A DNA stretch of 64,000 nucleotides from Octopus sinensis (GCF_006345805.1 NC_043026.1:8680001-8744000); one strand, 5' to 3'. Positions 4,213-60,908 are shown, counted from the first letter of the stretch. Numbers and translations are program-made. The notes: generated by a model not told the origin, from the sequence alone.

Positions 4213-5500
4213 TGAGGGGCGTTCAATAAGTAATGCCCCTGACCCACTTCCCATAGCAGTAGAGCAACAAAACTTGGCACAGTTATTAGTCTTTTTCTAC
4301 ATAGGAACCACCCAGAGTTACGCATTTCTCCCATCGTTTGATGCGGCTCTGGAGACCGTTTTTGTAGAAGAACCCAGCTTGGTCCTCCAACCTCAACGTA
4401 ACTTCAGAAATCAAGGCTGCATCATCTGGGAAACGCTTTCCTTTCAAAAACAACTTCATGATTGGGAAGAGGTGAAAATCAGAGGGTGCAAGGTCAGGAA
4501 AGTAGGGGGGATGGGGAGGAGTTCATAGCCATACGCCTGTGCTTCTGATCTGGCGACAAGCAAGTTGTGGACCGGAGCGTTGTCCTGCAGGGGGAAGATG
4601 CCTTTGCTGATCTTGCCCCACCTCTTGATTTTGATAACTTCTCTTAATTTCCTCAAAAGTGAAGCATAATAGGCTCCTGCAATTGTGGTACCCTTTGCCA
4701 GGAAATCTGTCATCACTACTCCGTCCTGGTCCCAGAAGACTGTGAGCATGACCTTGCCAGCAGAGGGCTGCACCCTTGCCTTCTTTGGAGGTGAGTCACG
4801 GTGTGTCCACTGCATTGACTGGGCTTTGGTCTCTCGATCATCGTGATCGACCCAGGTTTCATCCTGTGTAATCAGTCTTTTGAAAAATTTTGACTCATCT
4901 TCTTGGCACATCTCCAAATTCACCCTAGAGCATTCAACGCGTTCTTGCTTCTGGAAAGGCGTGAACAACCTGGGAATCCATCTGGCAGACACCTTTTGCA
5001 TATGCAAATGGTCATGAATGATAGTTTCCACAGACCCGGTACTAATCTTGACCTCATGGGCTATTTGGCGAATAATTATGCGTCGATTTTCCAAAATGGC
5101 AGCCTCAACTTGACGGACAGATGCCTCATCAATGGCAGAAGGCAGCGACCAGATCTGGGAGCTGTTTCCACAGGGTTCCGACCATGTTTGAATTCACGAT
5201 GCCAGCGTTTTACAAGGTCATATGATGGGGCATCATCACCATAAGTTACTTTCATTTCATCAAAAGTCTCCCGTGGTGTGCGTCCTTTCAAATACAAAAA
5301 CCGGATCACTGCTCGACATTCAACAGGCTCCATTTCACACTTGACTCGGTTCAAACACCTGTAAATCAGAAACCGCAATTAATTCAGAGCTGTAATTTGC
5401 CACTTACTCTATAGAGATATAAATGATTGCACATGCAAAATTTCAGCTAGATCAAACAACTGCAAGTGGGTCAGAAGCATTACTTATTGAACGTCCCTCG
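4213..5500 (-). mobile_element. Full-length mariner element (1288 bp) with frameshifted DD(34)D-type transposase
   Basis: TIRs gaggggcgttcaataagtaatgc / gcattacttattgaacgtccctcg flanked by TA. Motifs WIPRLF, TQDETW, QDNAPVH and YFPDLAPSD are spread over three frames (5378 to ~4286). Confidence 0.92.
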
Positions 5501-6525: not shown

Positions 6526-7869
6526 TCAGCGATATGGCTTCTTTCCTGTATGGAAACGTCTGTGAGAAGCTAAGCTGCTATTGCAGGAGAATGATTTACC
6601 ACAGATGTCACAGTGAAATGGCTTCTCTCCTGTATGAATACGTTTGTGTTTGGTTAGGTTACCATGATTAGAGAAAGATTTACTACAGACATCACAGTGA
6701 TATGGCTTCTCTCCTGTATGAATACGCTTATGTGCAGTCAAGATTCCGGCTGAAAGGTATGATTTACCACAGATATCACAGTGGTATGGCTTCTCTCCAG
6801 TATGGAAACGTTTGTGAGAAGCTAAGTTGCCACTTTGAGAGAATGATTTACCACAGATTTCACAGCGAAATGGCTTCTCTTTGGTATGAATACGTTTGTG
6901 ACGAGTCAACGCACACTGATGAGAGAATGATTTGTCACAAAAGTCACAGGGATATGGCTTCTCTCCTGTATGAACACGTTTGTGAGAAGCTAAGCTGCCA
7001 GGTCGAGTGAATGATTTACCACAGATATCACAAGAATATGGTGACTCTCCTGTATGAATACGTTTGTGTATAGTTAGTTTACCATTTACAGGAAAAGATT
7101 TGCCACAGATGTTGCAGTGATATGGCTTCTCTCCTGTATGAATACGTTTATGATAAGTTAGAGCACTGTAGTCAGAAAATGATTTACTACAGATATCACA
7201 GTGAAATGGCTTCTCTCCTGTGTGAATACGTCTATGAGAAGTTAAAGTACAACTGTGAGAGAATGATTTACCACAGATGTTACACTGATATGGCTTCTCT
7301 CCTGTATGAACACGTTTGTGAGATTTTAAATCCCCTCGGTGAGAGAATGATTTACCACAGACATCACAACGATAAGGCTTCTCTCCTGTATGAATACGTT
7401 TGTGTTCAGTTAAGTCATTACTTTGAGAGAATGATTTACCACAGATGTCACACTGATATGGCTTCTCTCCTGTATGAATGTGTTTGTGATAATTTAAAGC
7501 ACTTTTGTTAGAGAAGGATTTACCACAGACGTCACAGTGATAGGGTTTCTCTCCTGTATGAATACGTTGTTTGTGTACGAGCAATTCGGAACTTGTACAG
7601 AATGATTTACCACAGATATCACAGTGGTATGGCTTCTCTCCTGTATGGTAACATTTATGAGTAGCTAAGTTGTCATTTCGGGAGAATGATTTACCACAGA
7701 TGTCACAGTGAAATGGTTTCTCCCCTGTATGAATACGTTTGTGCATATTCAAACTTCTCTTATACAAGAATGACTTTTTACAGACATCACAGTCATGTGA
7801 TAAGTTTCTCCCTCCTTTTTCTGCATCTTCAGGAAAAACTATCTCCTCTAGTTTTTCACTTTTTTCCAT
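6526..7869 (-). CDS. C2H2 zinc-finger protein, gene 1 (15 fingers, 447 aa from MEKSEK)
   Basis: Repeating CxxC-x12-HxxxH-TGEKP units. The ATG was chosen by homology of the MEKSE leader. It ends at a TGA in a Cys position, and decayed fingers continue to ~6335. Confidence 0.9.
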
Positions 7870-9323
7870 TGTTTCTTTGAAATTCACAATGTATATATAA
7901 TTTTTTAATTCTTTTTGCTTCTATAGTCTTTTGTTTCCAAATATTTCAACTGCTGTATTTCTGTCTGGTATTACCTTTGTCCCAAAACTCTTTAGTAAAT
8001 TTATCCAAGTTTAATTCTTACACAGACACATCTTGTAGACACTCCAGCCAGTGATGTCCAGAAGGTTTGCTAATAACACAATTCAGAGTAAATATATCAG
8101 AGGAATTCCACCACAGATTTATAGAAACAATCTTATATATCTGTTCTCTACAATATTTCCATTTTGATCTTTAAAAAGCTGATAAATAATGAGAATGTAT
8201 CTTCAGTTATGCCAATGTCATCTGATATTCTGAAACAATAAAGAAACAACAGTGTAAGATATAGAGGCTACTTAAAAAAATACAGATTCAACATTTCCAT
8301 AAAGATAAACTCTAGAAATAAACATCTACCTAAACAGAACTAAACCTGGAACCATATATATATACAGAGAGATGTAATCGATACAAATTAATTTATTAAT
8401 TAATCAACATATTAACAATTGTTTCTTTTCTGAAATAAGATTAAAATCAGAGCGGTTGACTCGTTTTGCTCTTAGCCATTACAGCTTCCTCGTTATGTAG
8501 TTGACACAATCCGTTCTCTCTTCTGTTCCAACATGAATCACATAAGATGAACCCTGAACCATGAACGTCAAGTGGTTTATTCTCCAGCCAACTACCGACA
8601 ATCTAATTTTCACTAGCTATGAAACAACCACGTTTCTATAGTTTTTACTATTTCATAAGTACCTTTTGTAAAAATACAGTTATATAAATCCTTTGTCTTG
8701 GCTTAACAGCCCTCATCATTTGCTTTTACTGTTTTGTTCTCACTGTCCTGTTCTTGTTACCTCTTTTACCCCTCCGCAAAAAATCCCAAATTTTATTTAA
8801 TTTGCTTTGCGGGAAGGACGGTTTCAACGAAGTCGCGTCTTGTCCTTACCTTCGAAATGTGGAATAGTTGAAACAGGGACAACTGAAGAAGGGGAATATT
8901 CCTTGTGTTGTATGTCTCGTTTTTCTGTGGTTTTTTCGTTGTTTGAAGAAAAAAAGTTTGTTTTTCGTTGTTCAATGTTTTTTTGATGTCCTCAGCTCAA
9001 AGTTCACCCGTCCTGTCGAAAGACGCCTGTCTGTGACGTCCTCTTTTTGTTATTATTATTATCATTATTGTTTATACGTATTTTTGTATTCATATTCGTG
9101 TAACATCGTCCATTTTTCGTCCTTGTTTTGTATACATTCGAGGCTTTCTTCCAAGGAATCTAATGCGCTTGGCCAGATCGGAGCAATCTCAAGATTAATC
9201 AGCCGAAATTGCGAGGATGATCCGGTTCTTGACTGAAGATTGAAGGCTTTGAATGTCCCGTCCGTGTTTTTTGTATCGTCTTCTAAATGTTTTGCGTTCT
9301 TGTCCCAGTTTGTATTTTTTTAC

Positions 9324-10046: not shown

Positions 10047-10302
10047 TTGGTGTATATTTAATTTACATTTCATCATTATTTACAATTATTTAAGACGAGT
10101 AAAACGCAAATTCTTTTCCGGTTAATGCTTTTGTCTGTATTTAATTTCGATTTGCACATTGTTCGTCAATTCGCAACAAGCTCTTTAAAGTAAACAAAAT
10201 CAAAATTTTAAATTGGGCGGGGGGGGGGGGAGAATTAATTATTTTTGACTTAACTTCGGTAAACATTTCAAGAAATTTTATATATATATATATATATATA
10301 TA

Positions 10303-10817
10303 CTAGCTGTATCGCCCGGCGTTGCTCGGGTTTGTAAGGGAAATAACTATATAAGCATTTTTTAGAGAGTTACTTTCCTTATAGATGCCAATTCCGGCTT
10401 TCTTAGCCATTTCTGTTTTGGTGTCTTCAAGCCATGAAGTCGTTGTTCTAAAAGAACGCTGGTCTCCTTGACAACGCTTTACGACATTGATTTCCTTACA
10501 CTCCTTCCCCACAGCTTCACGAGGGAGGGAAGAAGGGGGAGAAGCAAACAGGTGCAGCTGTGAGCGTGGACGCCAACTCCGCTGCCATCGACACACGATG
10601 CATTTTATGCATTAAAATGGAATAAAAAATGATGTTAAATTATTTTTAAAATCGTAGACTCATCATTGACGCGCGCTAATACTCAGACGGGCTCGATATG
10701 AATCACGACTATAAGATACCCGAATTTGGTTAAACTGCACCGCAAAATGTGGGAGTAGTTAGGAATCTAAATCGAAGGGGACAGACACTCACACAACTAG
10801 AGTTTTATATATAAAGA
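10303..10817 (-). mobile_element. Non-autonomous Helitron-like element
   Basis: On the minus strand it has a 5'-TC(tttatatataaa) end and a GC-rich cccgagcaacgccgggcg segment before CTAG-3'. It is near-identical to 47541-48052. Confidence 0.75.
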
Positions 10818-10918
10818 TATGCAAACATTTATATTCTGTGTATTTTATGCTAAAAATATTTTTTTTTCTGAAGTCATAGTCTACGAAATAAACTGATCCA
10901 CGGCCCTGAAAAGGTCGA

Positions 10919-14072: not shown

Positions 14073-15998
14073 TCAGTGGGATTGCTTCTTTTCTATATGA
14101 ACACGTTTGTGAGAAGTTAAGTTGCCATGTTGAGTGAATGACCTACCACAGATGTCACAGTGATATGGCTTCTCACCTGTATGAATACGTTTGTGCATAG
14201 TCAAGCAACTACTTCTGGAGAACAATTTACCACAGGTATCACAGCGATATGGCTTCTCACCTGTATGAAAACGTTTGTGAGAAGCTAAGTGGCCACTTTG
14301 AGAGAATGATTTACCACAGATATCACAGCGATAAGGCTTCTCTCCTGTATGAATACGTTTGTGGTTAGTCAAGTTATAATTCTGAGAGAATGATTTACCA
14401 CAAACGTCACAGGGAAATCGCTTTTCACCTGTATGAACAAGTATGTGAGAATTTAAAGCACTTTGTGAAGAAAATGATATACTACAGACATTACAGTGAT
14501 ACGGCTTTTCTCCGGTATGATGACGTTTGTGTGTAGTCAAGTAACTACTTGTGGAGAATAATTTACCACAGATATCACAGTGATATGGCTTCTCTCCTGT
14601 ATGGGAACGTTTATGAGTAGCTAAGCCACTACTTTGAGAGAATGATTTACCACAGATATCACAAGGATATGGTTTCTCTCCTGTGTGAATACGTTTGTGG
14701 TTAGTCAAGTTATAGTTTTGAGAGAATGATTTACCACAGATGTCACAGTGAAATCGTTTTTCCCCAGTATGAACAAGTACGTGAGAATTTAAAGCACTTT
14801 GGTAAGAGAATGATGTACCACAGACATTACAGTGATATGGTTTCTCTCCTGTATGAATACGTTTGTGTGTAGCCAAATTATTTTGTTGAAAGAAGGATTT
14901 ACCACAAATGTTACAGTGAAATGACTTCACTCCAGTATGAATATGTTTGTGCATATTCAAGCAACTACTTCGAGAGAAAGATTTATCACAGACGTCACAG
15001 TGATAGGGTTTCTCTCCTGTGTGGAAACGTTTGTGAGAAACTAAGTGGCCACTTTGAGAGAATGATTTACCACAGACATCACAATGATATGGCTTCTCTC
15101 CTGTATGAGTACGTTTGTGGTTAGTCAAGTTATAATTCTGAGAGAATGTTTTGCCACAAATGTCACAGTGAAATAGCTTCTCCCCTGTATGAACACCTAT
15201 GTGAGAATTTAAAGTACTTTGGCAAGAGAATGATGTACTACAGACATTACAGTGATAGGGCTTTTCTCCTGTATGAATACGGTTGTGTATAGTCAAGTTA
15301 TTTTTTTGAAAAAATGATTTACCACAGACATTACAGTGAAATGGCTTATCCCCTGTATGGAGACGCTTGTGTGTAGTCAAGTTATTTTGTTGAAAGAATG
15401 ATTTACCACAAATGTCACATTCATAAGGCTTCTCCCCTGTATGAACACGTTGGTGTGTAGTCAAGTGAATTTTTTGATAGAATGATTTACCACAGATGTC
15501 GCAATGATAAGGCTTCTCTCCTGTATGAATACGCTTGTGTGTAGCAAAGATACTTGCTGAAGAGAAAGATTTGCCACAGACACCACAATGATATGGCTTC
15601 TCTCTTGTGTGGATAAGTCTGTGAGCAATTAAGTTACTACTTACAGAAAATGATTTACTACAGATATCACAGTGATATGGCTTCTCCCCTGTATGGAAAC
15701 GTTTGTGAGAAGTTAAAGCACCATTCTGAGTGAATGATTTACTACAGATGTTACACTGATATGGCTTCTCTCCTGTATGAATACGTGTGTGAGATTTTAA
15801 ATCACTTCGGTTAGAGAATGATTTTCCGCAAATGACACAGTGAAATGGTTTCTCCCCTGTATGAATACGTTTGTGCATATTCAAACTGCTCTTATACGAG
15901 AATGACTTTTTACAGACATCACAGTCATGTGATAATCTTCTCCCTTTTTCTGCATCTTCAGGAAAAATCATCTCCTCTAGTTTTTCACTTTTTTCCAT
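14073..15998 (-). CDS. C2H2 zinc-finger protein, gene 2 (22 fingers, 641 aa from MEKSEK)
   Basis: Uninterrupted 28-aa finger repeats. Start assigned by leader homology. Confidence 0.92.
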
Positions 15999-16362
15999 TA
16001 TTTTTCTTTGAAAATCACAAAATATATATATATATGTTTTCTTCTTTGTACTGCTATAGTCTTTTGTTTGCAAGTATTTCGACTGCTGTATTTCTGTCCA
16101 GTGTTACCTTTGTCCCAAAACTCGTTAGTAAATTTATCCAAGTTTAATTTGCAAAGAGACACATCTTGTAGACACTCCAGCCAGTGATGTCCAGAAGGTT
16201 TGCTAATAACACATTTCAGAGTAAATATATCAGAGGAATTCCACCACAGATTTATAGAAACAATCTTATATATCTGTTGTGTACAATATTTCCAATTTGG
16301 TCTTTAAAAAGCTGATAAATAATGAGAATGTATCTTCAGTTATGCCAATGTCATCTGATATT

Positions 16363-17278
16363 CTGAAAGAATAAAGAAACAACAGTGTAAGATATAGAGG
16401 CTACTTAAAAAAATACAGATTCAACATTTCCATAAAGATAAACTGTAGAAATAAACATTTACCTGAACAACAGAACTTTCTAATTTACTAAAATTTACAT
16501 CAGAAAAATTTTGTGTGGTGCTAACATATTTGTAAACTCCAGCTCCACATTCACAATTATTTTTATAAACAAACTAAGGTTAGGGTTAAAAAGTCGTTGT
16601 AGGATCGACTACTTACGACTAGCTAGTGCGGATGCGCGCACCGGGACCACTGTTCGCTTGTAGTAACCCTACCTGACTGTGTTTCGAACTCACCCAACTT
16701 CAGCAACTATGCTGACCAATTCCTACTCCCGAACACAACAATACAAAATGATGGAGCAATACTCACAACGAAATCATTTCAAATAAACGGGGGAAAAATA
16801 AATAAAGAAATTACTCATTTTGCCCCGCTTACTGATTTCGTCCCTTTCCTTTTATCAAGAAATAAATATTTGGTGAATTATAATAAAGCATTGGATTCTT
16901 AACATTTCTGTGGTTGGAGTTTATTTGGGAATATTTCTCCATCTAAACACACAACAAACAAACGTGGAAACGATGGAAAGTGTGGGAAGAAATGAAGAAT
17001 TACTCATTTTGCCCCGCTTACTAATTTCTTCCCCTTCCCTATATCAAGTGATAAATTATAATAAAGCATTGGATTCTCAGCATTTCTGTGGTTGGAGTTT
17101 ATTTTAAGAACATTTCTCCACCTAAAACACACAACAAACAAACTTAAAGAAGAAACGATGGAGCGTGTAGGAGGTTGCCGCCATAGCTAGAAATAGCAGC
17201 CAAATGTGGAACAGATCAAAGGACATCTGAGACACCAAAGTATTAAAAGATTAAATGTTTTCGTTGTTTAATACTTAC
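16363..17278 (-). other. Inferred intron 1 of gene 2
   Basis: Donor GTAAGT at 17278-17273 and acceptor ctttattctttcAG at 16364-16363. Both sites are conserved among the paralogs that carry them. Confidence 0.6.
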
Positions 17279-18214: not shown

Positions 18215-18290
<76 letters not shown>

Positions 18291-18549
18291 ATGTGTATAT
18301 TTAAAACACTATACAATATATATATATATATATCAGTGCTTTTCAAACTTTTTGCTGGAGCGGAACCCCAAGGAAACATTCCACTGGCTCGAGGAACCCC
18401 TGGGCAATAATTTAATAGTCTTATGCACACATATCTGCACAGGAGACTTAAAAATTACAGCCGATTTCAGCAGTTTTGTAACTTCTTGCGGAACCCCTGC
18501 ACTGTACTGGCGGAACCCTAAGGTTCCACGGAACCCTGGTTGAAAACCA

Positions 18550-18584
<35 letters not shown>

Positions 18585-18624
18585 CAAAAGAAGTCTCTAC
18601 AGGATTCGATGAAGCCATATATTG

Positions 18625-18674
<50 letters not shown>

Positions 18675-19004
18675 ATGTGTATATTTAAAACACTATACAA
18701 TATATATATATATATATATCAGTGCTTTTCAAACTTTTTGCTGGAGCGGAACCCCAAGGAAACATTCCACTGGCTCGAGGAACCCCTGGGCAATAATTTA
18801 ATAGTCTTATGCACACATATCTGCACAGGAGGCTTAAAAATTACAGCCGATTTCAGCAGTTTTGTAACTTCTTGCGGAACCCCTGCACTGTACTGGCGGA
18901 ACCCTAAGGTTCCACGGAACCCTGGTTGAAAACCACTGATATATATATATATATATATATATGACAAAAGAAGTCTCTACAGGATTCGATGAAGCCATAT
19001 ATTG

Positions 19005-19056
<52 letters not shown>

Positions 19057-19317
19057 ATGTGTATATTTAAAACACTATACAATATATATATATATATATA
19101 TCAGTGCTTTTCAAACTTTTTGCTGGAGCGGAACCCCAAGGAAACATTCCACTGGCTCGAGGAACCCCTGGGCAATAATTTAATAGTCTTATGCACACAT
19201 ATCTGCACAGGAGGCTTAAAAATTACAGCCGATTTCAGCAGTTTTGTAACTTCTTGCGGAACCCCTGCACTGTACTGGCGGAACCCTAAGGTTCCACGGA
19301 ACCCTGGTTGAAAACCA

Positions 19318-19354
<37 letters not shown>

Positions 19355-19746
19355 CAAAAGAAGTCTCTACAGGATTCGATGAAGCCATATATTGCACATT
19401 TTATTTATATATATATATATATATATATAAATATGTGTATATTTAAAACACTATACAATATATATATATATATCAGTGCTTTTCAAACTTTTTGCTGGAG
19501 CGGAACCCCAAGGAAACATTCCACTGGCTCGAGGAACCCCTGTGCAATAATTTAATAGTCTTATGCACACATATCTGCACAGGAGACTTAAAAATTACAG
19601 CAGTTTTGTAACTTCTTGCGGAACCCCTGCACTGTACTGGCGGAACCCTAAGGTTCCACGGAACCCTGGTTGAAAACCACTGATATATATATATATATAC
19701 ATATGACAAGAGAAGTCTCTACAGGATTCGATGAAGCCATATATTG

Positions 19747-19824
<78 letters not shown>

Positions 19825-20070
19825 ATGTGTATATTTAAAACACTATACAATATATATATATATATATATCAGTGCTTTTCAAACTTTTTGCTGGAGCGGA
19901 ACCCCAAGGAAACATTCCACTGGCTCGAGGAACCCCTGGGCAATAATTTAATAGTCTTATGCACACATATCTGCACAGGAGACTTAAAAATTACAGCCGA
20001 TTTTAGCAGTTTTGTAACTTCTTGCGGAATCCCTGCACTGTACTGGCGGAACCCTGGTTGAAAACCACTG
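17513..20070. mobile_element. Composite array of seven ~219-bp hAT-type MITEs with six identical-type spacers, flanked by the 8-bp TSD CCATGGAC
   Basis: Units start at 17513, 17925, 18334, 18720, 19102, 19474 and 19870 with TIRs cagtgcttttcaa / ttgaaaaccactg. ccatggac occurs at 17505-17512 and 20071-20078. Confidence 0.9.
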
Positions 20071-22830: not shown

Positions 22831-23198
22831 TGACTGTGTGGTAAGTAGCTTGTTTACCAACCACATGGTTCCGGGTTCAGTCCCACCTGCGTGGCACCTT
22901 GGGCAAGTGTCTTCTACTATAGCCCCGGGCCGACCAATGCCTTGTGAGTGGATTTGGTAGACGGAAACTGAAAGAAGCCCGTCATATATGTGTATATGTA
23001 TATATGTTTGTGTGTCTGTGTTTGTCCCCCTAGCATCACTTGACAACCGATGCTGGTGTGTTTACGTCCACGTCACTTAGCGGTTCGTCAAAAGAGACCG
23101 ATAGAATAAGTACTGGCTTACAAAAGAATAAGTCCCGGGGTCGAGTTGCTCGATTAAAGGCGGTGCTCCAGCATGGCTGCAGTCAAATGACTGAAACA
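22831..23198 (+). mobile_element. SINE family 1
   Basis: High similarity to 28274-28663. Confidence 0.8.
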
Positions 23199-23698
23199 GT
23201 GTTTCTCCCCCCATCAACACTTGGTGTGTTTATTTCTCCCATAACCGAGCAGTTCGGCAAAATGAACCAATAAAATAAGTACAAGGCTCAAAAAATAAGT
23301 CTTAGGGTTGGTTTGATCCACTGAAACTCTATAAGATGATGCTCCAGGATGGCAGTAATCAAAACTGCTGAAACAAGTAAAAGAATGTTTATATAAAAAT
23401 GTGAATGTGTAGCTGGAGTTTAGAAATATGTTAGCTTCACACAAGATTTTCTGATGTAAATATTAATAAATTAAAAAGTTCTGTTGTTCAGTTAAATGTT
23501 TATTTCTAGAGTTTATCTCTATGGAAATGTTGAATCTGTATTTTTTTAAGTAGCCTCTCTATCTTACACTGTTGTTTCTTTATTATTTCAGAATATCAGA
23601 TGACATTGGCATAACTGAAGATACATTCTCATTATTTATCAGCTTTTTAAAGGCCAAAATGGAAATATTGTACAGAACAGATATATAAGATTGTTTCT

Positions 23699-23875
23699 AT
23701 GAATCTGTGGTGGAATTCCTCTGATATATTTACTCTGAAATGTGTTATTAGCAAACCTTCTGGACATCACTGGCTGGAGTGTCCACAAGATGAGTCTGTT
23801 TGCAAATTATACTTGGATAAATTTTCAAATGAGATTTGGGACAAAGGTGATAATGGACAGAAATACAGCAGTTGA
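23699..23875 (+). other. 58-codon upstream ORF in the 5'UTR of gene 3 (MNLWWNSSDIFTLKCVISKPSGHHWLECPQD...)
   Basis: Translated by hand: ATG at 23699, TGA at 23873-23875. It falls below the ORF-track cutoff. Confidence 0.45.
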
Positions 23876-23950: not shown

Positions 23951-25773
<1,823 letters not shown>

Positions 25774-28680: not shown

Positions 28681-29545
28681 AGAGATTCTGTCCATTTGTG
28701 TTTGTTCATTTGTTTGTCCTCCAAAATGAAAGTAAATGGTTCAAGGGAAACTGTTTTACTTTTTCTTCTTATGTTATCTATATATATATATAAAAGAAAT
28801 TCTGTCCGTTCGTGTTTGTCCTTCAAAATCAAAGTAAATGGTTCAAGGGGAACTATTATGCTTTTACTTCTAACCTAGGGAAACTATTATACTTTTCCTT
28901 CTTATCTTATTTATAGATATAAAAGAGAGATTCTGTCCATTTGTGTGTTTGTTTGTCCTCAGAAATGAAAGTAAATGGTTCAAGGGAAACTATTATGCTT
29001 TTTTTCTTATACAGGGAAACTACAATGCTTTTTCCTTTTATCTTTATCTATCTATATATATATATACAATTAAGGGCTCCTAAATTAGGATGCCGAGTGC
29101 TGGGAACACAAAAGGGAGATGAATTTATCGAGAGTGAAAATCAAAAACGTTTACCGATAACTTTACATCTCGGACTGATCAGTTTCTGCCTCTTTCTAGC
29201 AAAACACAGAATATGTTTGCTAAGGCATCCTAATTTAGGAGCCCTTAATTGTATTTCTACATGAATAATATTTTTCTATATGAATAATATTTTGTCTAAT
29301 GACTAATTTGTCTTTTGTGCTGGGCACCTGGTAGTAACCAATATTACTACCCTTCTTGTTTATATTCGCATATATATATATATATATATATGACAGAGAT
29401 TCTGTCCGTTTGTCCTCCAAAGCGAAAGTAAATGGTTCAAGGGAAACTATTGTTTTTTTTCTTCTTATTTATATATATAAAAGAGACTCTGTTGATTTGT
29501 GTTTGTTTGTCCTCCAAAATGAAAGTAAATGGATCAAAGGAAGCT
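28681..29545 (+). repeat. Degenerate tandem repeat of ~100-130-bp units resembling Helitron 5' ends
   Basis: About five units containing attctgtcc..tttgtcctccaaaatgaaagtaaatggttcaagggaaact, each preceded by tatatatataaa or a similar run. Confidence 0.65.
29067..29251. mobile_element. 185-bp TA-flanked MITE with perfect 28-bp TIRs
   Basis: caattaagggctcctaaattaggatgcc / ggcatcctaatttaggagcccttaattg. Confidence 0.85.
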
Positions 29546-29559
29546 ATTATGCTGTTGCC

Positions 29560-29730
29560 TAACTTCTCTCAACAAAAATTATGCAATGGTAAAAGATTGT
29601 GCACAAACCAATGAGGGACTGCATTGAGGCAAATATTCTCACTGGTTGTGGTAAAGGTGACTCTGTGTTCATTCCTCACACACCAGTTATACCAGTTTCT
29701 GGAGAGATTGCATCTTTCCTTTGGTGGCAT
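29560..29730 (+). mobile_element. Helitron helicase relic
   Basis: KLCNGKRL..CIEANILTGCGKGDSVFIP matches PIF1-like LCNGTRL..VFIPRI. Confidence 0.65.
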
Positions 29731-29864: not shown

Positions 29865-30425
29865 GATTAGAGACCTTTGGAAGTATGCTGTGCATGAGAA
29901 GACCTGGCAGGACAAGTGAGACCATAACCCAGGGCCTCAGTCCACTTATGCATACCTTTCCTTCTTGGGACACAAAACTCTACTTGTGAAGACCTGCTGA
30001 GGCAAGTGAAAATCAAAATCAAAATCGATCAACATCAATGGAAATTGTAGCTGTGATACCAGTGCTGGTGGCACTTAAGAGAACCATCCGAACGTGGCCG
30101 TTGCCAGCGCCGCCCCGACTGGCTTCCGTGCCAGTGGCACGTAAAAAGCACCATCCGATCATGGCCGTTGCCAGCCTCGCCTGGCCTCTGTGCTGGTGGC
30201 ACATAAAAATCACCATCCGATTGTGGTCATTTGCCAGCCTCGTCTGGCACGTAAAAAGCACCCACTACACTCACGGAGTGGTTGGCGTTAGGAAGGGCAT
30301 CCAGCCGTAGAAACATTGCCAGATCAGACTGGACCTGGTGCAGCCTTCTGGCTTCCCAGACCCCAGTTGCACCGTCCAACCCATGCCATCATGGAAAGCG
30401 GATGCTAAACGATGATGATGATGTA
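29865..30425 (+). mobile_element. RTE-type LINE 3' end with internal ~55-bp repeats and a (GAT)n tail
   Basis: DLWKYAVHEKTWQDK* followed by 3'UTR. Shorter copies at 31325-31777, 33425-33778, 36685-37090 and 56317-56647. Confidence 0.6.
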
Positions 30426-31200: not shown

Positions 31201-32124
31201 GACATACCATTCTGCTGTCATGGCCGTAAAGACAGAAGGTTGCCAATGGATAATGCCATTCACATTGGGATATAATTCGAATTAAAAGTAGAAGAATAAA
31301 AATGAAACAAAATTACATGACATTCTGTTGAGGCAAGTGGAAATCAGAAATCAGAACCAAAATCAAAGTCGATCAACATCAATGGAAATTGCAGCTGTGA
31401 TACCAGTGCCGGTGGCACGTAAAAAGCGCCATCCGATTCGTAGCTGTTGCCAGCCTCGCCTGGCCCCCGTGCCGGTGGCACATAAAATGCACCATCAGAA
31501 CATGGCTGTTGCCAGCGCCGCCCTGACTGGCCTCCGTGCCGGTGGCACGTAAAAAGCACCATCTGATCGTGGCCGTTTGCCAGCTTCGTCTGGCACGTAA
31601 AAAACACCCACTACACTCACGGAGTGGTTGGCGTTAGGAAGGGCATCCAGTCATAGAAACTCTGCCAGATCAGACTGGGCCTGGTGCAGCCTTCCGGCTT
31701 CCCAGACCCCAGTTGAACCGTCCAACCCATGCTAGCATGGAAAGCGGACGCTAATGATGATGATGATGATGATGATGAATAGAGATGTTGTTCTTTCACT
31801 TTTGACATGAAATGCCAAATTATTGCCAATGTTATATTGTTTTAATGCAAATGAACCAAAAAAAAAAAAGTTACATGTTGACACTCACAGGGTCTGATAC
31901 TATTATCGTGTAAAATTTGATTTAATTTGGTTGAGCTGTCTGAGAATGCATTGGGAACAGACAGGCAAAGAATTTTATATAAATAGATTATATAATTGCC
32001 ATTACTGCATTGATCAATAATAACACGTGCAAGTCACTTATTGTTATCGTATAATAAACAAACAGAAATTCATGTTTTTCCTACTTCAATTATTGCATGT
32101 TTTTTCTCTTATGACACACAAGCA

Positions 32125-33139: not shown

Positions 33140-33885
33140 ATAATTGTCACATATTACATTTACAGATAATTTCCTCTATTTACATAATATCGAGGTCTCT
33201 TTCTTTCTTTTATCTTACCATTTTTATCAACGTCCGGGTTGCGGATCCGTGGAATAAGCTGCCGGACGAGATAGTGAAGATGCCGAAGACCGCTCGGTTC
33301 AAAGTCTCTCTTGACCAGAAATGGCCTGAACTCTTTGCATGAACACCACCCTGTACATAACTCCATGTGCCCCTACATGGCCTAGCTTTTTGCTTTTTGA
33401 GCCAAATTAACTTAACTTGTATATATATGGAATGGAAATGGAAATTGCAGCTGTGATACCAGTGCCAGTGGTACGTAAGAGAACCATCTGAACGTGGCCA
33501 TTGCCAGCGCTGCCCCGACTGGCCTCTGTGCCGGTGGTATGTAAAAAGCACCATCCGATCGGGGCTGTTGCCAGCCTCACCTGGCCTCCATGCCAGTGGT
33601 ACATAAAAAGTACCATCTGATCGTGGCCGTTTGCCTGCCTCGTCTGGCATGTAAAAAGCACCCACTACACTCATGGAGTGGTTGGTGTTAGGAAGGGCAT
33701 CCAGCCGTAGAAACATTGCCAGATCAGACTGGGCCTGCTAGCATGAAAAGCGGACGCTAAACGATGATGATGATGATAAAGTTATCAAGAAACTATATAT
33801 AAGGAAAATACTGACATAATTATCAAAGGGCAGTACCTATTCTATTGGAGTAAACTCAAGTAAAAGTAGACAATTATTGTAGGGC

Positions 33886-34269: not shown

Positions 34270-35042
<773 letters not shown>

Positions 35043-35755
35043 GACTGAAGACGTAATCTGAAATAAATTTCTTAATTTCATTAATGTTTTTACTCAGTAG
35101 AGGGATGTGCTCTGCAGGATTATGGGTCGTCATAAACTGGTATGATAAATAGAGGGTCGCAACTCTAAAAAGTTTGGGAACCACTGAACTAGACTAAAGG
35201 ATTTTTTTGACTTCATGATGCTTCCGCTCTTTTGCTACCCTCTTAAAAAAGCACAGGCTGCATTTCATTGTGGCCCCATCATCAGTAAGGTTCCTTATAC
35301 ACCCAGTAAGTTTATAAATTATTTAAAAAGTATAGGAGTGATCACCAGGACGCATTGAACCTGATGTTAATTCTATTATTGAGCGTAGCAAGAGACAGGA
35401 TCATCCTTCTCACAGGCCTCACTGAAGACGTAATCTGAAATAAATTTCTTAATTTCATTAATGTTTTTACTCAGTAGAGTTAAGTGGGTCGTCATAAACT
35501 GGTGTGATAAATAGTGGGTCGCGACTCTAAAAAGTTTGGGAACCACTGTTCTAGTGTTAACCGTTTAGCATGTAAACCAGCCACAACTGGACCAAATATG
35601 CTACCTCTTTTATTTTCAAACTAACCAGAGTTGGCCTCTTACACCTACCCTACAATGTTATTCTAAAAATACTCAATCACATCGTCATCACTTGAAAGCT
35701 GTGAGTTAATGCAGGACAAATTGAAAATAACGTGAATAAACATCACATTGGACAG

Positions 35756-36113: not shown

Positions 36114-37261
36114 ATATATATATATATGTATGTGTGGTGTGTATATGTTTGTGTGTCTGTGTTTGTCCCCCTAGCATTGCTTGACAACTGATGCTGGTGT
36201 GTTTACGTCCCCGTCACTTAGCGGTTCGGCAAAAGAGACCGATAGAATAAGTACTGGGCTTACAAAGAATAAGTCCCGGGGTCGATATGCTCGACTAAAG
36301 GCAGTGCTCCAGCATGGCCGCAGTCAAATGACTGAAACAAGTAAAAGAGTAAAGAGTATAGTAAAGGGTTAAGTCGTCACTTACAGGGAATGTTTTAGCA
36401 CAAATATCAGTGGGAACACTTCAGCCCTGCCATGATCTCGTTTGTGAGAAGGTAATTTGCTATTTTGAGTGAATGACTTCTTGTATGGATATGTCTGTGA
36501 TCAGATAAGCGAGAACTCATAGTGAATGGTTTCCCCACAGATATCATTGTGATATGGTTTCTCTTCTGTGTGAAAATGTCTGTGAGCATCTGATTTGTCA
36601 TTTCGGGAGAATTATTTACCACAGACATCACAGGAATAGGGTGTCTCAATAAATTAGCTTACTATTAAAAGAGAAATATTTGTTACAGATGCCTTGACTG
36701 GCTTCTGTGCCGGTGGCACGAAAAAAGCACCGTCCGAATCATGGCCGATGCCAGCGCCGCCTCGACTGGCTTCCGTGCCGGTGGCACGTAAAATACACCA
36801 TGCGATCGTGGCTGTTGCCAGCACCGCCTTGACTGGATTCCGTGCCGGTGGCACGTTAAATGCACCTGATCGTGGTCGTTGCCAGCCTCACCTGGCACCT
36901 GTGCCGGTGGCATGTAAAAAGCACCCACTACACTCACGGAGTGGTTGGCGTTAGGAAGGGCATCCAGCTGTAGAAACACTGCCAGATCAGACTGGGGCCT
37001 GGTGCAGCCTTCTGGCTTCCCAGACCCCGGTCGAACTGTCCAACCCATGCTAGCATGGAGAACAGACGTTAAACGATGATGATGATGATGTCACAGTCAG
37101 ATGGCTTCTCACCTGTATGAACACCTTTATAATGAGTTAGAGCACTGATGAAAGAGAAGAGATGTTACAGGAATATGGTGTCTCTCCTGAATGAAAATGT
37201 TTGTGAGAAGTTAAGCACTACTTTGAGAGAAGGATTTACTACAAATGATATGTCTTCTATC

Positions 37262-38545
37262 CTACACGAACAAGTATACGAGTACACCACTGTGATAAGG
37301 CTTCTCTCCGGCATGAAGACGTTTGTGACATTTTAAAACACTTTGGTCAGAGAATGATGTACCACAGACATCACAGTGATAAGGCTTCTCTCCTGTATGA
37401 ACACGTATGTGCCTAGTCAAGTTACCTTTTTGAGAGAATGATTTACCACAAGTGTCACAGTGATATGGCTTCTCCCCTGTATGAATACGCTTGTGAGATT
37501 TTAGGGCATTTTGGCGAGAGAATGATGTACCACAGACATCACAGGGATATGGCTTTTCTCCTGTATGAATACGTTTGTGTGTAGTCATGGTACTACTCTG
37601 TGGGAATGATTTACCACAAATGTCACAGTCAAATGGCTTCTCTCCTGTATGAACACGTTGGTGTATAGTCAAGTTATTACTTTGAGGGAAAGATTTACCA
37701 CAGATGTCACAGTGAAACGGCTTCTCACCCGTATGAACACGTATGTGAGACTTCAAGGCATTTTGGTGAGAGAATGATGTACCACAGACATTACAGTGAA
37801 ATGGCTTTTCTCCAGTATGAATACGTTTGTGTGTGGTCAAGCTACCTTTCTGAGGGAATGATATACCACAAATGTCACAGTCATATGGCTTATCTCCAGT
37901 ATGAATACGTTGGTGTTTGGTCAGGCTGTCTTTTCGCCGGAATGATTTATCACAGATGTCACAGCAAAATGGCTTCTCCCCTGTATGAAAACGCTTGTGA
38001 GAATCTAAAGAACTCCGCTGAGAGAATGATGTACCACAGACATCACAGTGAAATGGCTTCTCTCCTGTATGAACATGCTTGTGTGTAGTCAAACTACCAT
38101 GTTGAGAGAATGATTTAGAACAGATGTCACAGTGATATGGCTTCTCTCCAGTATGAATACGCTTGTGTTTAGTCAGTGAAACATTTATAGAGAATGATTT
38201 ACCACAAGTGTCACAGTGAAATGGCTTCTCCCCTGTATGAACACGTATATGAGAATTTAGAGCATTGTGGTCAGAGAATGATCTACTACAGACATTACAG
38301 TGAAATGGCTTCTCTCCAGTATGAATACGTTTGTGTGTAGTCAAGTTACTACTCTGAGAGAATGATTTATCACAAATATCACAATGAAATGGCTTCTCTC
38401 CTCTATGAATACGTTTGTGCGCATTCAAGCTGCTCTTTTGAGAGAAAAACTTTTTACACACATCACACTTATGTGACAATTTTTTTCTCCCTTTTCCTCT
38501 ATTTTCTGGAAAAATCAGTTTCTTTATTTTCTCACTCTTTTCCAT
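37262..38545 (-). CDS. C2H2 zinc-finger protein, unit A (14 fingers, 427 aa)
   Basis: MEKSEK leader and TGEKP fingers. Decayed tail at 37090-37260 and 36372-36650. Confidence 0.9.
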
Positions 38546-40012
38546 TATTTTTCTTCAAAAATCACAGAATATAATCTTTTTACACCTTTTTGATTCTATA
38601 GTCTTTTGTTTCCAAATATTTCAACTGCTCTATTTCTGTCCATTATCACCTTTGTACCAAATCTCATTAGAAAATTTATCCAAGTATAATTTGCACACAG
38701 ATTCATCTTGTAGACACTCCAGCCAGTGATGTCCAGAAGGTTTGCTAATAACACATTTCAGAGTAAATATATCAGAGGAATTCCACCACAGATTTATAGA
38801 AACAATCTTATATATCTGTTCTGTACAATATTTCCATTTTGGTCTTTAAAAGATGATAAATAATGAGAACGTATCTTCAGTTATGCCAATGTCATCTGAT
38901 ATTCTGAAATAATAAAGAAACAACAGTGTAAAATATAGAGGCTACTTAAAAAGATACAGATTCAACATTTCCATAAAGATAAACTCTAGAAATAAACATT
39001 TAACTGAACAACAGAACTTTCTAATTTATTAATATTTACATCAGAAAATCCTGTTTGAAGCTAACATATTTGTAAACTCCAGCTACACATTCACACACAC
39101 ACACGTTTATATATATATATATATATACTCTTCCTTGTGTTAGTTGTTTTGACTGTGGCTATACTGGAGCATCATCTTAGAGGGTATTAGTTGATCAAAT
39201 CAACCCTAGGACTTCATTTTTGAGCCTAGTACTTATATTGACCTCTTTTGTGAAACCACTAAATTATGGGGACATAAACACACCAACACTGGTTATCAAA
39301 CAGTCACAAAGACACACAGATATATATATGTATATACACATAAATACTCATTAATATATATAGGGCTTCTTTCAGTTTCCATTCCAGAAAGCACGCAATC
39401 CCCAAAGTAAAAAAACCCAGGATTTTATAACATTCAGAGTTCGGAAATGTCCTTTGAAATAATTCTGTCTAAAACCTACAATGATTTCAGTTGAAATCTT
39501 CCTAAGCAACGTCAATGGTGAGAAAACAAGGCGAAATTACTCATTTTGCCCCGCTTACTAATTTCTTCCCGATCCCGATACCAAGAAACAAACATTCGAT
39601 GAATTATAATAAAGTATTCTTTATAACATCCCACGGAAGTTTCCAGCAGAGTTCTGAAATGTCCATTAGATTAATTCTGGCTAAAACCTACAATAAATTC
39701 AGTTGAAATCTTTCTAACCAATGTCATAATGGTGAGAGAATAAGGAGAAATTACTCATTTTGCCCCGCTTACTAATTTCTTCCCCTTCCCTATATCAAGT
39801 GATAAATTATAATAAAGCATTGGTTTCTCAATATTTCTGTGGTTGGAGTTTATTTTAAGAACATTTCTCTCCACTAAAACACACAACAAACAAACTTAAA
39901 GAAGAACGATGGGGCGGTAGGAGGTTGCCGCCATAGCTAGAAATAGCAGCCAAATGTGGAACAAAATCTGATTCACAAAGTATCGAAAGATTAAATGTTT
40001 TTCGTTGTTTAT

Positions 40013-43493: not shown

Positions 43494-44441
43494 CTATCCT
43501 ATATGAACAAGTATGTGAGAATTTAAAAGACTTTGGTCAGAGAATGATTTACCACAGACTTCACAGGGATAAGGCTTCTCTCCTGTATGAATACGTATGT
43601 GCGAAGTCAAGTTACCTTTTCGAGAGAATGATTTACCACAAGTGTCAAAGTGAAATAGCTTCTCCACTGTATGAACACTTCTGTGAGAGTTTAAAGCACT
43701 CTGGTCACTCTGTATGAATACGTTTGTGTCTAGTCAAGTTATAACTCTGAGGGAAAGATTTACCACAAATGTCACAGTGAAACAGCTTCTCCCCTGTATG
43801 AACACGTATGTGAGAATTTAAAGCACTTTGGGAACCGAATGATGTACCACAGACATCACAATGAAAAGGCTTCTCTCCTGTATGAATACGTATGTGTGTA
43901 GTCAGGCCACCTTTCTGAAAGAATGATTTACCACAGATGTCACAGTTAAATGGCTTCTTCCCTGTATGAATACGTTGGTGTGTAGTCAAGTTAATTTTTT
44001 TAGAGAATGATTTACCACAGGTGTCACAATGAAATGGATTCTCCCCTGTATGAACAAGTATATGAGAGTTTAAAGCACTCTGGTCAGAGAATGATGTACT
44101 ACAGACATCACAACGATAAGGCTTCTCCCCTGTATGAATACGTCTGTGTCTAGTCAAGTTAAAACTTTGAGGGAAAGATTTACCACAGATGTCGCAGTGA
44201 AATGGCTTCTCCCCTGTATGAACACGTTCGTGTGTAGTCAAGTTACTTATTTTAGAGAATGATTTACCACAGGTGTCACAATGAAATGGATTTTCCCCGT
44301 ATGAACACGTTTGTGCATATTTAAGTGACCCTTTTGTGAGAAAGACTTTTTACAGACATCACAGTCATATGACAGCTTTTGTTTCCCCTCTTCTCTATCT
44401 TCAGGAAAAATCAGTTCCTTTAGATTCTCACTCTTTTCCAT
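43494..44441 (-). pseudogene. C2H2 ZNF pseudogene, unit B
   Basis: 1-bp deletion at ~44301 after finger 1, a ~41-nt deletion at ~43710 relative to unit C, and a C>F finger lesion. Confidence 0.8.
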
Positions 44442-47520: not shown

Positions 47521-47540
47521 AGGACATATATATATATATA

Positions 47541-48052
47541 CTAGCAGTATCGCCCGGCGTTGCTCGGGTTTGTAAGGGAAATAACTATATAAGCATTTTT
47601 AGAGAGTTACTTCCCTTATAGATGCCAATTCGGGCTTTCTTAGCCATTTCTGTTTTGGTGTCTTCAAGCCATGAAGTCGTTGTTCTAAAAGAACGCTGGT
47701 CTTCTTGACAACGCTTTACGACGTTGATTTCTTTACACTCCCTTCCCCACAGCTTCACGAGGGAGGGAAGGGGGAGAAGCAAACAGGTGCAGCTGTGAGC
47801 GTGGACGCCAACTCCGCCGCCATCGACACACGATGCATTTTATGCATTAAAATGGAATAAAAAATTATGTTAAATTATTCTTTAAATTGTAGACTCATTG
47901 TAGACGCGCGCTAATACTCAGATGGGCTTGATATGAATCACGACTATAAGATACCCGAATTTGGTTAAACTGCACCGCAAAATGTGGGAGTAGTTAGGAA
48001 TCTAAATCGAAGGGGACAGACACTCACACAACTACAGTTTTATATATATAGA
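47541..48052 (-). mobile_element. Non-autonomous Helitron-like element inserted in (TA)n, unit B only
   Basis: Near-identical to 10303-10817; absent at the equivalent sites ~41165 and ~54480. Confidence 0.78.

Positions 48053-60867: not shown

Positions 60868-60908
<41 letters not shown>

What the first reader, a model, noticed from the sequence alone, without database searches (positions are those of the whole stretch)
8039..8145. Near-invariant 107-nt 5'UTR block shared by all seven paralogs
The block occurs at 8039, 16172, 23676(+), 38714, 44610, 51840 and 60093. By eye the copies differ from the gene 2 copy by only 1, 0, 1, 0, 2, 2 and 3 nt. In contrast, the adjacent UTR nearer the ATG and the finger arrays of genes 1/2 versus 3/A-D are clearly more diverged. 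No start codon is shared by all copies. This looks like a selected cis-element (RNA structure, translational or splicing control, or internal enhancer) common to the family, and may be undescribed.
Basis: partly seen in the sequence, partly recalled or inferred. Interest (0 to 1): 0.75.

Follow-up and report, generated by a model that had tools for sequence, protein, structure and literature searches.

The report
Homogenised splice-acceptor and 5'UTR module of octopus ZNFs
The near-identical 107-nt block is real, but it is only part of a ~296-nt stretch (intron end, splice acceptor, start of the 5'UTR) that recombination among tandem zinc-finger gene copies appears to have kept alike, so it is an ordinary product of gene-family evolution, not a new regulatory element.

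Summary
The 107 nt are only the 3' third of a ~296-nt near-invariant stretch.

About 97 nt of that stretch lie upstream of a canonical 3' splice site (YTNAY at -25, 16-17/20 pyrimidines, CAG|A). The other ~200 nt are the start of the non-coding 5' part of the single large ZNF exon. The acceptor module recurs upstream of ZNF ORFs in Octopus sinensis, O. vulgaris and Argonauta hians. An annotated O. vulgaris model splices at exactly this junction.

Inside the stretch every pair of copies differs by 2-5%, whatever its age. In the adjacent UTR the young pairs differ by ~3% and the old pairs by 15-21% (dS 0.45-1.0). The block/flank rate ratio is ~0.8 for young pairs and ~0.15-0.25 for old pairs (heterogeneity p=0.003). 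Genealogies switch at the block's edge (max-chi2 p<0.0005).

Between the window's copies and the related O. sinensis copies the stretch is 80% identical, against 68% for the flanking UTR. There is no Rfam hit, no folding signal and no ORF.

Best reading: a splice-acceptor/5'UTR module under modest constraint, homogenised by gene conversion or unequal exchange. Ordinary; low interest.

The parts
8030..8326 (-). g1: full near-invariant stretch (~296 nt).
   Evidence: MAFFT alignment of the seven copies and sliding identity; coordinate mapping.
8217..8253 (-). g1: 3' splice-site module ACTGTTGTTTCTTTATTGTTTCAG|AATATCAGATGAC. The G of the AG is at 8230 and the first exon base at 8229. A YTNAY branch-point-like motif lies 25 nt before the AG; 16/20 pyrimidines precede it.
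   Evidence: The same junction is used by the annotated O. vulgaris model P0103 and is conserved in O. sinensis, O. vulgaris and Argonauta.
8207..8221 (-). g1: mini-uORF ATG ACA TTG GCA TAA (MTLA*) at exon nt 9. It is present in all seven copies; its stop is lost only in pseudogene g5.
7870..8029 (-). g1: variable part of the 5'UTR between the invariant stretch and the ATG (A of the ATG at 7869). Old pairs differ by 13-21% here.
6526..7869 (-). g1: C2H2 zinc-finger ORF, 447 aa from the ATG.
   Evidence: 84-nt finger period.
ORF 14073-15998, 641 aa.
ORF 23951-25663, 570 aa.
ORF 37262-38545, 427 aa. A recombination breakpoint lies just upstream, between 39044 and 39072.
ORF 50178-51671, 497 aa.
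ORF 57591-59924, 777 aa. A second breakpoint lies in the finger array, between 59632 and 59644.

Best explanation
The block is the middle-to-3' part of a ~296-nt module found at the 5' end of every ZNF gene in this tandem cluster. The module consists of the last ~97 nt of an intron (branch-point-like TTAC at about -25, a polypyrimidine tract, CAG) and the first ~200 nt of the large exon that carries the 5'UTR and the whole zinc-finger ORF.

The acceptor is needed to splice an upstream, still unidentified, non-coding leader exon onto the ZNF exon. The exonic part is uORF-rich leader sequence. This module is under modest purifying selection, evolving at roughly 0.55-0.85 of the flanking rate.

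Its near-invariance among the seven copies is mainly concerted evolution. Non-allelic gene conversion or unequal exchange between the tandem paralogs homogenised this ~300-nt tract at about the time the youngest copies (g5/g6/g7) arose. Since then it has drifted at close to the flanking rate.

Shown here: the anatomy, the flat divergence, the mosaic genealogies and the cross-species levels. Inferred: actual splicing in this species, the direction and number of conversion events, and any role of the uORFs.
For: Anatomy:
- Stops occur in all six frames.
- A canonical 3'ss is identical in all 7 copies.
- The same motif lies 320-740 nt upstream of ZNF CDSs in O. vulgaris (7 sites in L002, L003 and L006), O. 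sinensis and Argonauta hians.
- O. vulgaris model P0103 joins an exon with a G|GTAAGT donor to exactly this AG.

Homogenisation:
- All pairs differ by 2.0-5.1% in the block. In the adjacent UTR the figures are 3.1-3.8% (g5/6/7), 8.2% (g3-g4), 15% (g1-g2) and 13-21% for the other pairs.
- The block/UTR rate ratio is 0.64-0.86 for young pairs and 0.14-0.27 for old pairs. Three independent pairs are heterogeneous (p=0.003 with UTR+CDS, 0.06 with UTR only). Fisher's test of g5g6 against g1g2 gives p=0.0035.
- dS of old pairs is 0.45-1.0 and dN 0.15-0.23, so selection alone would need the block to be several times more constrained than the finger protein.
- The {g1,g2} split has 0 supporting sites in 296 nt of block, against 6 in 157 nt of UTR and 9 in 197 nt of CDS.
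- A three-column mosaic patch (alignment columns 1283-1285, ~11 nt 3' of the block) groups {g2,g3,g4} against {g1,g5,g6,g7}.
- g4 is g5/g6-like upstream (90-93% over 1.6 kb) and g3-like downstream, with the switch at 39044-39072 (max-chi2 50.9, permutation p<0.0005). g7 switches to g3-like at 59632-59644.
- The tract is an island. For old pairs homology upstream is absent (g1), ~95 nt (g2) or ~79% (g3).
- A third of the tract is intronic, and pseudogene g5 keeps the tract.

Modest constraint: the tract is 80% identical between the window's copies and the O. sinensis copies, against 68% for the UTR. Within the O. sinensis cluster the figures are 91% and 87%.
Against: - No transcript data for this species could be obtained, so use of the acceptor here rests on sequence and on an annotated homologue whose model looks chimeric.
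- The 3' edge of the tract is fairly sharp in all copies (identity falls from ~98% to ~81% within ~40 nt). A functional boundary explains this more simply than several independent conversion events would.
- The site-pattern test (informative against singleton sites) is only borderline (p=0.06), and the counts for young pairs are small (5-9 differences).
- The O. sinensis comparison copies are partly decayed (s2 and s3 are pseudogenes, s4 has a deletion) and may not be orthologous, which weakens them as a measure of constraint.
- No orthologous cluster from a sister species was available to show paralogs grouping by species.
Confidence: 0.6

Rival explanations
1. Strong purifying selection on a subfamily-specific cis-regulatory element spanning the intron-exon junction. 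Candidates are a splicing enhancer or silencer platform, a uORF- or protein-binding translational control region, or a DNA-level enhancer or insulator bound by a factor, possibly the cluster's own ZNFs. Under this reading the sequence is kept invariant because of its function, and recombination is incidental.
For: - The tract has sharp boundaries in all seven copies.
- It is better conserved than the flanking UTR between the window's copies and the O. sinensis copies, 80% against 68%. The intronic ~100 nt are the best-conserved part at 83%.
- The MTLA* mini-uORF is intact in the six intact genes and broken only in the pseudogene.
- In the 107-nt sub-block the young pairs differ by only 0-1 nt.
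Against: - Over the whole tract the young pairs diverge at 0.64-0.86 of the flank rate and the old pairs at 0.14-0.27. A constant constraint cannot give both (p=0.003).
- The constraint needed (about 3-5% divergence against dS 0.45-1.0) would exceed that on the zinc-finger protein itself (dN 0.15-0.23).
- The O. sinensis paralogs show no such invariance (91% against 87%).
- The pseudogene g5 retains the tract.
- Genealogies switch around the tract.
Confidence: 0.2
2. The stretch is the core promoter and transcription start of each gene rather than an intron end. In the window's copies a TATA-like CTATATC lies ~32 nt upstream of the A of TCAGAA, which resembles an initiator. The tract would be conserved or homogenised as a promoter plus the first 200 nt of the transcript.
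For: The spacing of the TATA-like and Inr-like motifs can be read directly from the sequence. Homology among all seven copies begins only ~100 nt upstream of this point, as expected for a minimal promoter carried along with the gene.
Against: - The TATA-like motif is not conserved in O. sinensis (CTACATT), O. vulgaris (TGTATGT, CTCTGTC) or Argonauta.
- The polypyrimidine tract, the CAG and the TTACAC branch-point-like motif are conserved in all of them.
- An annotated O. vulgaris model uses the site as an acceptor, with a consensus GTAAGT donor 1.5 kb upstream.
Confidence: 0.1
3. The block encodes a structured RNA, either a 5'UTR element or an independent or antisense small RNA such as a miRNA precursor, and its fold requires sequence invariance.
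For: One short local hairpin (ACAGAT...ATCTGT) is kept in most O. sinensis copies. Three predicted pairs show double changes. One 80-nt window reaches z=-2.6 with mononucleotide shuffles.
Against: - No Rfam family matches at E<=1.
- The MFE is no better than dinucleotide shuffles for the 107-nt, 200-nt or 367-nt RNA (z -0.33, +0.20, +0.48).
- The consensus fold is weak (-10.4 kcal/mol, covariation term -1.14).
- No window stands out on either strand once the 36 windows tested are taken into account.
- The hairpin is not kept in the O. vulgaris subfamily.
Confidence: 0.03

Closest known systems
Concerted evolution (interlocus gene conversion or unequal crossing-over) of short tracts in tandemly duplicated gene families. 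Classic cases are the globin and growth-hormone clusters and the primate KRAB-ZNF clusters (from general knowledge).
   Same: An island of very low paralog divergence a few hundred nt long, flanked on both sides by much older divergence. The divergence in the island is independent of pair age. Genealogies are mosaic, with statistically supported breakpoints. The tract length (~300 nt) is within the usual range for conversion tracts.
   Different: Here the homogenised tract is non-coding (intron end plus 5'UTR), while the coding finger array diverges. All seven copies, not just a pair, share one tract with a fairly common 3' edge. The direction and number of events are unknown.
Canonical U2-type 3' splice site preceding a single large zinc-finger-coding exon. 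This is the usual architecture of poly-ZNF genes, for example vertebrate KZNFs with small 5' exons and one finger exon (from general knowledge).
   Same: A YTNAY branch-point-like motif at -25, 16-17 of 20 pyrimidines, CAG|A, followed by one exon holding all the fingers. The junction is used in an annotated homologue.
   Different: No effector-domain exon (KRAB-, SCAN- or BTB-like) is evident, and the ORF starts inside the finger exon ~360 nt after the junction. Conservation of the ~35-nt acceptor module as far as Argonauta is greater than a generic splice-site consensus requires.
uORF-bearing 5' leaders that damp translation of regulatory proteins.
   Same: There are 3-7 upstream ATGs per leader. 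The first mini-uORF (MTLA*) is shared by all intact copies.
   Different: The uATG is absent from several O. sinensis and O. vulgaris copies (s3, s4, v3). The peptide is not conserved, and no functional test exists.

Membership tests
U2-type 3' splice site | AG dinucleotide at the intron end, preceded by a polypyrimidine tract | tested here: met
   CAG| with 16-17 pyrimidines in the 20 nt before the AG in all seven copies; identical 37-nt motif x7.
U2-type 3' splice site | Branch-point consensus (YTNAY) 18-40 nt upstream of the AG | tested here: met
   CTTAC or TTTAC 25 nt before the AG in all seven copies. The TTACAC/TTGAC motif is kept in O. vulgaris, O. sinensis and Argonauta. Sequence match only; the branch point was not mapped.
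U2-type 3' splice site | Observed joining to an upstream donor in transcripts | tested here: inconclusive
   The annotated O. vulgaris model P0103 joins exon L002:19387-19602 (donor G|GTAAGT) to the homologous AG; the exon starts at 21088. The model looks chimeric, and no transcript of the window's species could be retrieved.
Interlocus gene-conversion / concerted-evolution tract | Paralog divergence in the tract far below that of both flanks | tested here: met
   The block differs by 2-5%, against 13-21% in the UTR, 17-26% in the CDS and dS 0.45-1.0 for old pairs. Upstream homology for old pairs is absent or ~79%.
Interlocus gene-conversion / concerted-evolution tract | Tract divergence independent of the age of the paralog pair (a compressed genealogy), rather than scaled down uniformly | tested here: met
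   The block/UTR rate ratio is 0.64-0.86 for young pairs and 0.14-0.27 for old pairs. Heterogeneity p=0.003 (UTR+CDS) or 0.06 (UTR only). There are 0 {g1,g2}-supporting sites in the block against 15 in the flank.
Interlocus gene-conversion / concerted-evolution tract | Phylogenetic incongruence or breakpoints between adjacent segments | tested here: met
   Max-chi2 breakpoints for g4 (39044-39072) and g7 (59632-59644), permutation p<0.0005. Mosaic patch at alignment columns 1283-1285.
Interlocus gene-conversion / concerted-evolution tract | Paralogs group by species rather than by orthology when a sister species' cluster is added | not testable with these tools
   No orthologous cluster was retrievable. 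The protein searches were swamped by generic ZNFs. The O. sinensis copies are a related but probably non-orthologous cluster.
Constrained structured RNA element (Rfam-type cis-regulatory RNA) | Match to a described family, or folding energy below that of shuffles | tested here: not met
   No Rfam match at E<=1; z -0.33, +0.20, +0.48.
Constrained structured RNA element (Rfam-type cis-regulatory RNA) | Compensatory base-pair changes across homologues | tested here: inconclusive
   RNAalifold covariation term -1.14 kcal/mol. 3 of 31 pairs show double changes, in only 9 sequences.
Deeply conserved non-coding element under purifying selection | Cross-species identity clearly above that of neighbouring non-coding sequence | tested here: inconclusive
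   80% against 68% between the window's copies and the O. sinensis copies. This is an excess, but a modest one. Only the ~35-nt acceptor module is recognisable in other subfamilies and in Argonauta.
TATA/Inr core promoter | TATA-like box ~30 nt upstream of an initiator, conserved among homologues | tested here: not met
   The spacing fits in the window's copies, but the TATA-like motif is not conserved in O. sinensis, O. vulgaris or Argonauta, whereas the splice-site features are.

The most novel reading that the evidence does not exclude
The conserved acceptor-plus-leader module could be a family-wide 'docking cassette'. It would let many ZNF exons in a cluster be spliced alternatively onto shared upstream leader exons or promoters. 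That would be a variable terminal-exon cluster, the mirror image of the protocadherin and UGT1A arrangement. Homogenisation would then be favoured because all acceptors must compete equally for one donor and share one translational (uORF) control. The O. vulgaris model that runs from one ZNF gene through an intergenic exon into the next gene's acceptor would then reflect real read-through splicing rather than an annotation artefact.
Probability: 0.08. Interest if true: 0.6.

Novelty: new member of a known kind. Interest (0 to 1): 0.25.

Why it matters
As it stands, this is a clean worked example of concerted evolution confined to a non-coding intron/5'UTR junction in the expanded octopus C2H2-ZNF family. 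It also shows that near-identity among paralogs is not by itself evidence of a selected element.

The practical value is modest. The conserved acceptor module (TTACACTGTTGTTTCT..TTTCAG|A) marks the start of the finger exon in several octopod ZNF subfamilies. It could help correct gene models, which are visibly poor in the public annotations: CDS-only, chimeric or fragmented. It also implies that each ZNF has at least one unannotated upstream leader exon and promoter still to be found.

Tried and rejected
- Coding potential of the block: stops in all six frames. Rejected.
- Known RNA family: Rfam evalue-mode scan of 7800-8500, no hit.
- Stable RNA fold: the 107-, 200- and 367-nt sense RNAs fold no better than shuffles. 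A sliding 80-nt scan of both strands found nothing convincing. RNAalifold with O. sinensis copies was weak.
- Exact look-up of the window's ZNF proteins, to get gene models or transcripts: none on record. O. bimaculoides P0121 has no contig on record.
- Three homology searches (175-aa N-terminus, leader+finger profile, full-length g3) were swamped by generic C2H2 proteins. They yielded only distant octopod relatives. No close ortholog and no RNA-seq contig was obtained.
- Two metagenome scans, for the invariant core and for the acceptor motif: 0 hits.
- Search for a leader exon in the window, using the exon that O. vulgaris P0103 splices to the acceptor: no homology. That exon is itself a repeated element in O. 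vulgaris.
- A 5' donor at the 3' edge of the block (TGT|GTAAGA) is present in only 4 of 7 copies and absent in O. sinensis. Rejected as a conserved splice site.
- Sequence upstream of the block is SINE-like or microsatellite sequence by its look (tRNA-like GGTTCnGGTTCAGTCCCAC motif, (TA)n). It is not a shared regulatory region.
- Literature: nothing found on conserved UTRs or concerted evolution of octopus ZNFs. The 2015 octopus genome paper is not held.
- The bacterial promoter/terminator scanner and the phage, plasmid and E. coli collections were not used, as they are irrelevant to an animal locus.

Full report
**1. The observation**

A 50-nt core of the block occurs at exactly the seven stated positions with at most 2 mismatches. 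The number expected by chance is 0. The ZNF ORFs lie on the - strand, except gene 3, so the block is 5' of each ORF in gene orientation.

I aligned the seven loci in gene orientation, from 900 nt upstream to 600 nt downstream of the block. Near-identity is not confined to 107 nt. Mean pairwise identity is at least 96% over about 296 nt (alignment columns 976-1272). It falls to ~80-85% on the ATG side and to no homology, or ~70-80%, on the upstream side. The coordinates of the full tract are:
- g1 8030-8326
- g2 16163-16459
- g3 23495-23791
- g4 38705-39000
- g5 44601-44896
- g6 51831-52126
- g7 60084-60379

**2. Anatomy**

The tract has stop codons in all six frames. About 97 nt from its 5' end sits the motif ACTGTTGTTTCTTTATTnTTTCAG|AATATCAGATGAC, identical in all seven copies apart from the one variable position marked n. 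It carries 16-17 pyrimidines in the 20 nt before the AG and a YTNAY branch-point-like motif (CTTAC or TTTAC) 25 nt before the AG. This is a textbook U2-type 3' splice site.

Downstream follow ~200 nt of invariant exon, ~160 nt of variable leader, and then the ATG of a leader peptide (MEKSEKL/NL...) that runs straight into the finger array. The homologous ATG is the annotated start of O. sinensis protein P0007.

The exonic leader holds 3-7 upstream ATGs. The first gives a four-codon uORF, MTLA*, at exon nt 9. It is shared by all copies and has lost its stop only in g5. g5 is a pseudogene, with a frameshift after ~50 codons near 44299, yet it retains the tract.

**3. Relatives**

The protein searches were swamped by generic C2H2 proteins, but they gave octopod family members. 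In an 89-kb O. sinensis locus (L001) four copies of the same architecture occur: intron end, TTTCAG|AACATCAG, block, variable leader, ATG.

In O. vulgaris loci L002, L003 and L006 and in Argonauta hians L004, ZNF genes of other subfamilies carry TTACACTGTTGTnTCT...TTTCAG|A 320-740 nt upstream of their CDS. The exonic block is only faintly recognisable in these, or not at all.

The annotated O. vulgaris protein P0103 maps with its last exon starting at L002:21088, immediately after ...TTATTTCAG. Its previous exon ends in G|GTAAGT. So at least one public gene model uses this junction as an acceptor, although that model looks chimeric.

The closest named relative of the window's leader peptide is an O. 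bimaculoides protein, 69% identical to g3 over 97 aa. The species of the window was not determined.

**4. Selection or homogenisation?**

Several independent lines point to homogenisation as the main cause of the near-invariance.

(a) Divergence in the tract is flat. All 21 pairs differ by 2.0-5.1%. In the adjacent 160 nt of UTR the young pairs g5/g6/g7 differ by 3.1-3.8%, g3-g4 by 8.2%, g1-g2 by 15% and the other pairs by 13-21%. The block/UTR rate ratio is 0.64-0.86 for young pairs and 0.14-0.27 for old pairs. For three phylogenetically independent pairs the table of block against UTR+CDS differences is (8,10,8; 112,101,21), which is heterogeneous at p=0.003. With the UTR only, p=0.06. Fisher's test of g5g6 against g1g2 gives p=0.0035. 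A constant constraint cannot produce both ratios.

(b) The deep {g1,g2}-against-rest split has 0 supporting sites in the 296-nt tract, but 6 in the next 157 nt of UTR and 9 in the next 197 nt of CDS. Variation in the tract is mostly singletons, 18 against 9 informative sites.

(c) Synonymous divergence of old pairs is dS 0.45-1.0 and dN 0.15-0.23. Under selection alone, the tract would have to be several-fold more constrained than the protein.

(d) Genealogies change across the tract. Upstream, g4 is 90-93% identical to g5/g6 over 1.6 kb. Downstream it pairs with g3. The maximum-chi-square breakpoint falls at 39044-39072, just 5' of the tract (chi2 50.9, permutation p<0.0005). g7 switches from g6-like to g3-like at 59632-59644 in the finger array. 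A three-column patch about 11 nt 3' of the tract groups {g2,g3,g4} against {g1,g5,g6,g7}, across the deep split.

(e) The tract is an island. For old pairs, upstream homology is nil (g1), ~95 nt (g2) or ~79% (g3).

(f) One third of the tract is intronic and would be absent from mature mRNA. This argues against a purely 5'UTR-level function.

**5. Residual constraint**

Between the window's copies and the O. sinensis copies, the tract is 80% identical against 68% for the variable UTR and 65% for the leader CDS. The intronic ~100 nt are best conserved, at 83%. Within the O. sinensis cluster the contrast is small, 91% against 87%.

Three rough estimates of the tract's relative rate agree on a modest constraint of about 0.55-0.85. 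They are the cross-species comparison (~0.6), the O. sinensis paralogs (~0.7) and the window's young pairs (0.64-0.86). This is expected for a splice site, its branch point and tract, and adjacent exonic signals. The extra three- to four-fold deficit seen only for old pairs in this cluster is what I attribute to conversion.

Caveats:
- The O. sinensis copies are partly decayed and may not be orthologous.
- Counts for young pairs are small.
- The 3' boundary is rather sharp.
- In the 107-nt sub-block the young pairs differ by only 0-1 nt.

**6. RNA-structure and other readings**

There is no Rfam match. The MFE z-scores are -0.33, +0.20 and +0.48. The RNAalifold consensus is weak, with a covariation term of -1.14 kcal/mol. 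No window stands out on either strand.

A promoter reading (TATA-like motif at -32, Inr-like TCAGA) fits the window's copies. However, the TATA-like motif is not conserved in other octopods, while the splice-site features are.

**7. Verdict**

The thing observed is the intron-end, acceptor and 5'-leader module of a tandem C2H2-ZNF cluster. Its near-invariance is best explained by concerted evolution (gene conversion or unequal exchange) on top of modest splice-site and leader constraint. Confidence is ~0.6.

Strong selection on a subfamily-specific cis-element remains possible (~0.2). The promoter reading has ~0.1 and structured RNA ~0.03.

I found no description of this module in the papers available, but the phenomenon is of a well-known kind, so interest is low. 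The decisive data are transcripts from this species and the orthologous cluster in a sister species, and neither was obtainable with the tools at hand.

Noticed in passing
window 44150-44441 (g5): g5 is a pseudogene. A 1-nt deletion near 44299 shifts the frame after ~50 codons, and the ORF from the ATG at 44441 is only 64 aa. It still keeps the full conserved tract and the acceptor. Its MTLA* uORF has lost its stop (TAA to TAT).
   Followed up: partly
window 34278-34841: An eighth, decayed zinc-finger array (84-nt period, 6.8 copies, 71% matches; many stops in every frame of the - strand, the orientation its consensus unit shares with the - strand genes). It has no recognisable copy of the block or acceptor next to it.
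   Followed up: partly
window 59632-59644 (g7) and 39044-39072 (g4): Statistically supported recombination breakpoints between paralogs. g7's finger array switches from g6-like to g3-like. g4 switches from g5/g6-like (upstream) to g3-like (downstream).
   Followed up: yes
window 8017-8019, 16150-16152, 23802-23804, 38692-38694, 44588-44590, 51818-51820, 60071-60073: About 11 nt 3' of the tract, g1, g5, g6 and g7 read TGT|GTAAGA (a consensus-like 5' donor), while g2, g3 and g4 read T(T/G)TGCAAA. This mosaic patch cuts across the deep g1/g2 split. It is not conserved in O. sinensis.
   Followed up: partly
window 4456-5094 (-) and 46913-47470 (-): Transposon remnants: a mariner/Tc1-type transposase fragment (PF01359, E 1.5e-22) and a reverse-transcriptase fragment (PF00078, E 1.4e-11).
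   Followed up: partly
window 10288-10820 and 47526-48055: A 534-nt segment repeated at 95.7% identity in two intergenic places, the second next to the RT fragment. It is probably a young transposable element.
   Followed up: no
window 30062-30248, 31406-31584, 33462-33648, 36691-36886: Four short arrays of a GC-rich 62-67-nt tandem repeat (GTGCCGGTGGCACGTAAAAAGCACC...) in the large gap between g3 and g4. They account for the local GC peak (0.44-0.46). From memory, tandem repeats of 70-90 bp were reported to be enriched around octopus ZNF clusters; this was not checked.
   Followed up: no
window 18246-20055: A 382-nt unit repeated 4.7 times at 91% identity, rich in (TA)n, upstream of g2.
   Followed up: no
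window ~22980-23420, 39100-39700, 52200-52800, 60480-60900: Sequence directly upstream of the conserved tract in g3-g7 looks like a tRNA-derived SINE (GGTTCnGGTTCAGTCCCACTGCG...GGAAACTGAAAGAAGCCC) plus (TA)n/(TG)n microsatellites. This explains the patchy 'homology' upstream of the tract.
   Followed up: partly
L002 10001-21184 (O. vulgaris OX597842.1): The annotated protein P0103 is a chimeric-looking model. It strings together pieces of one ZNF array and a repeated intergenic exon (19387-19602, also at L002:6290-6789 at 95% identity). It ends in the 5' leader of the next ZNF gene. This is either read-through splicing or an annotation artefact.
   Followed up: partly
L001 (O. sinensis CM016862.1) 22815-, 29209-29583, 35164-35653: Of the four O. 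sinensis family copies, s2 has a frameshift, s3 lacks the ATG and s4 has a ~50-nt deletion inside the block. The annotated P0007 model spans 69 kb for a 305-aa product. The O. sinensis cluster looks largely decayed and poorly annotated.
   Followed up: partly
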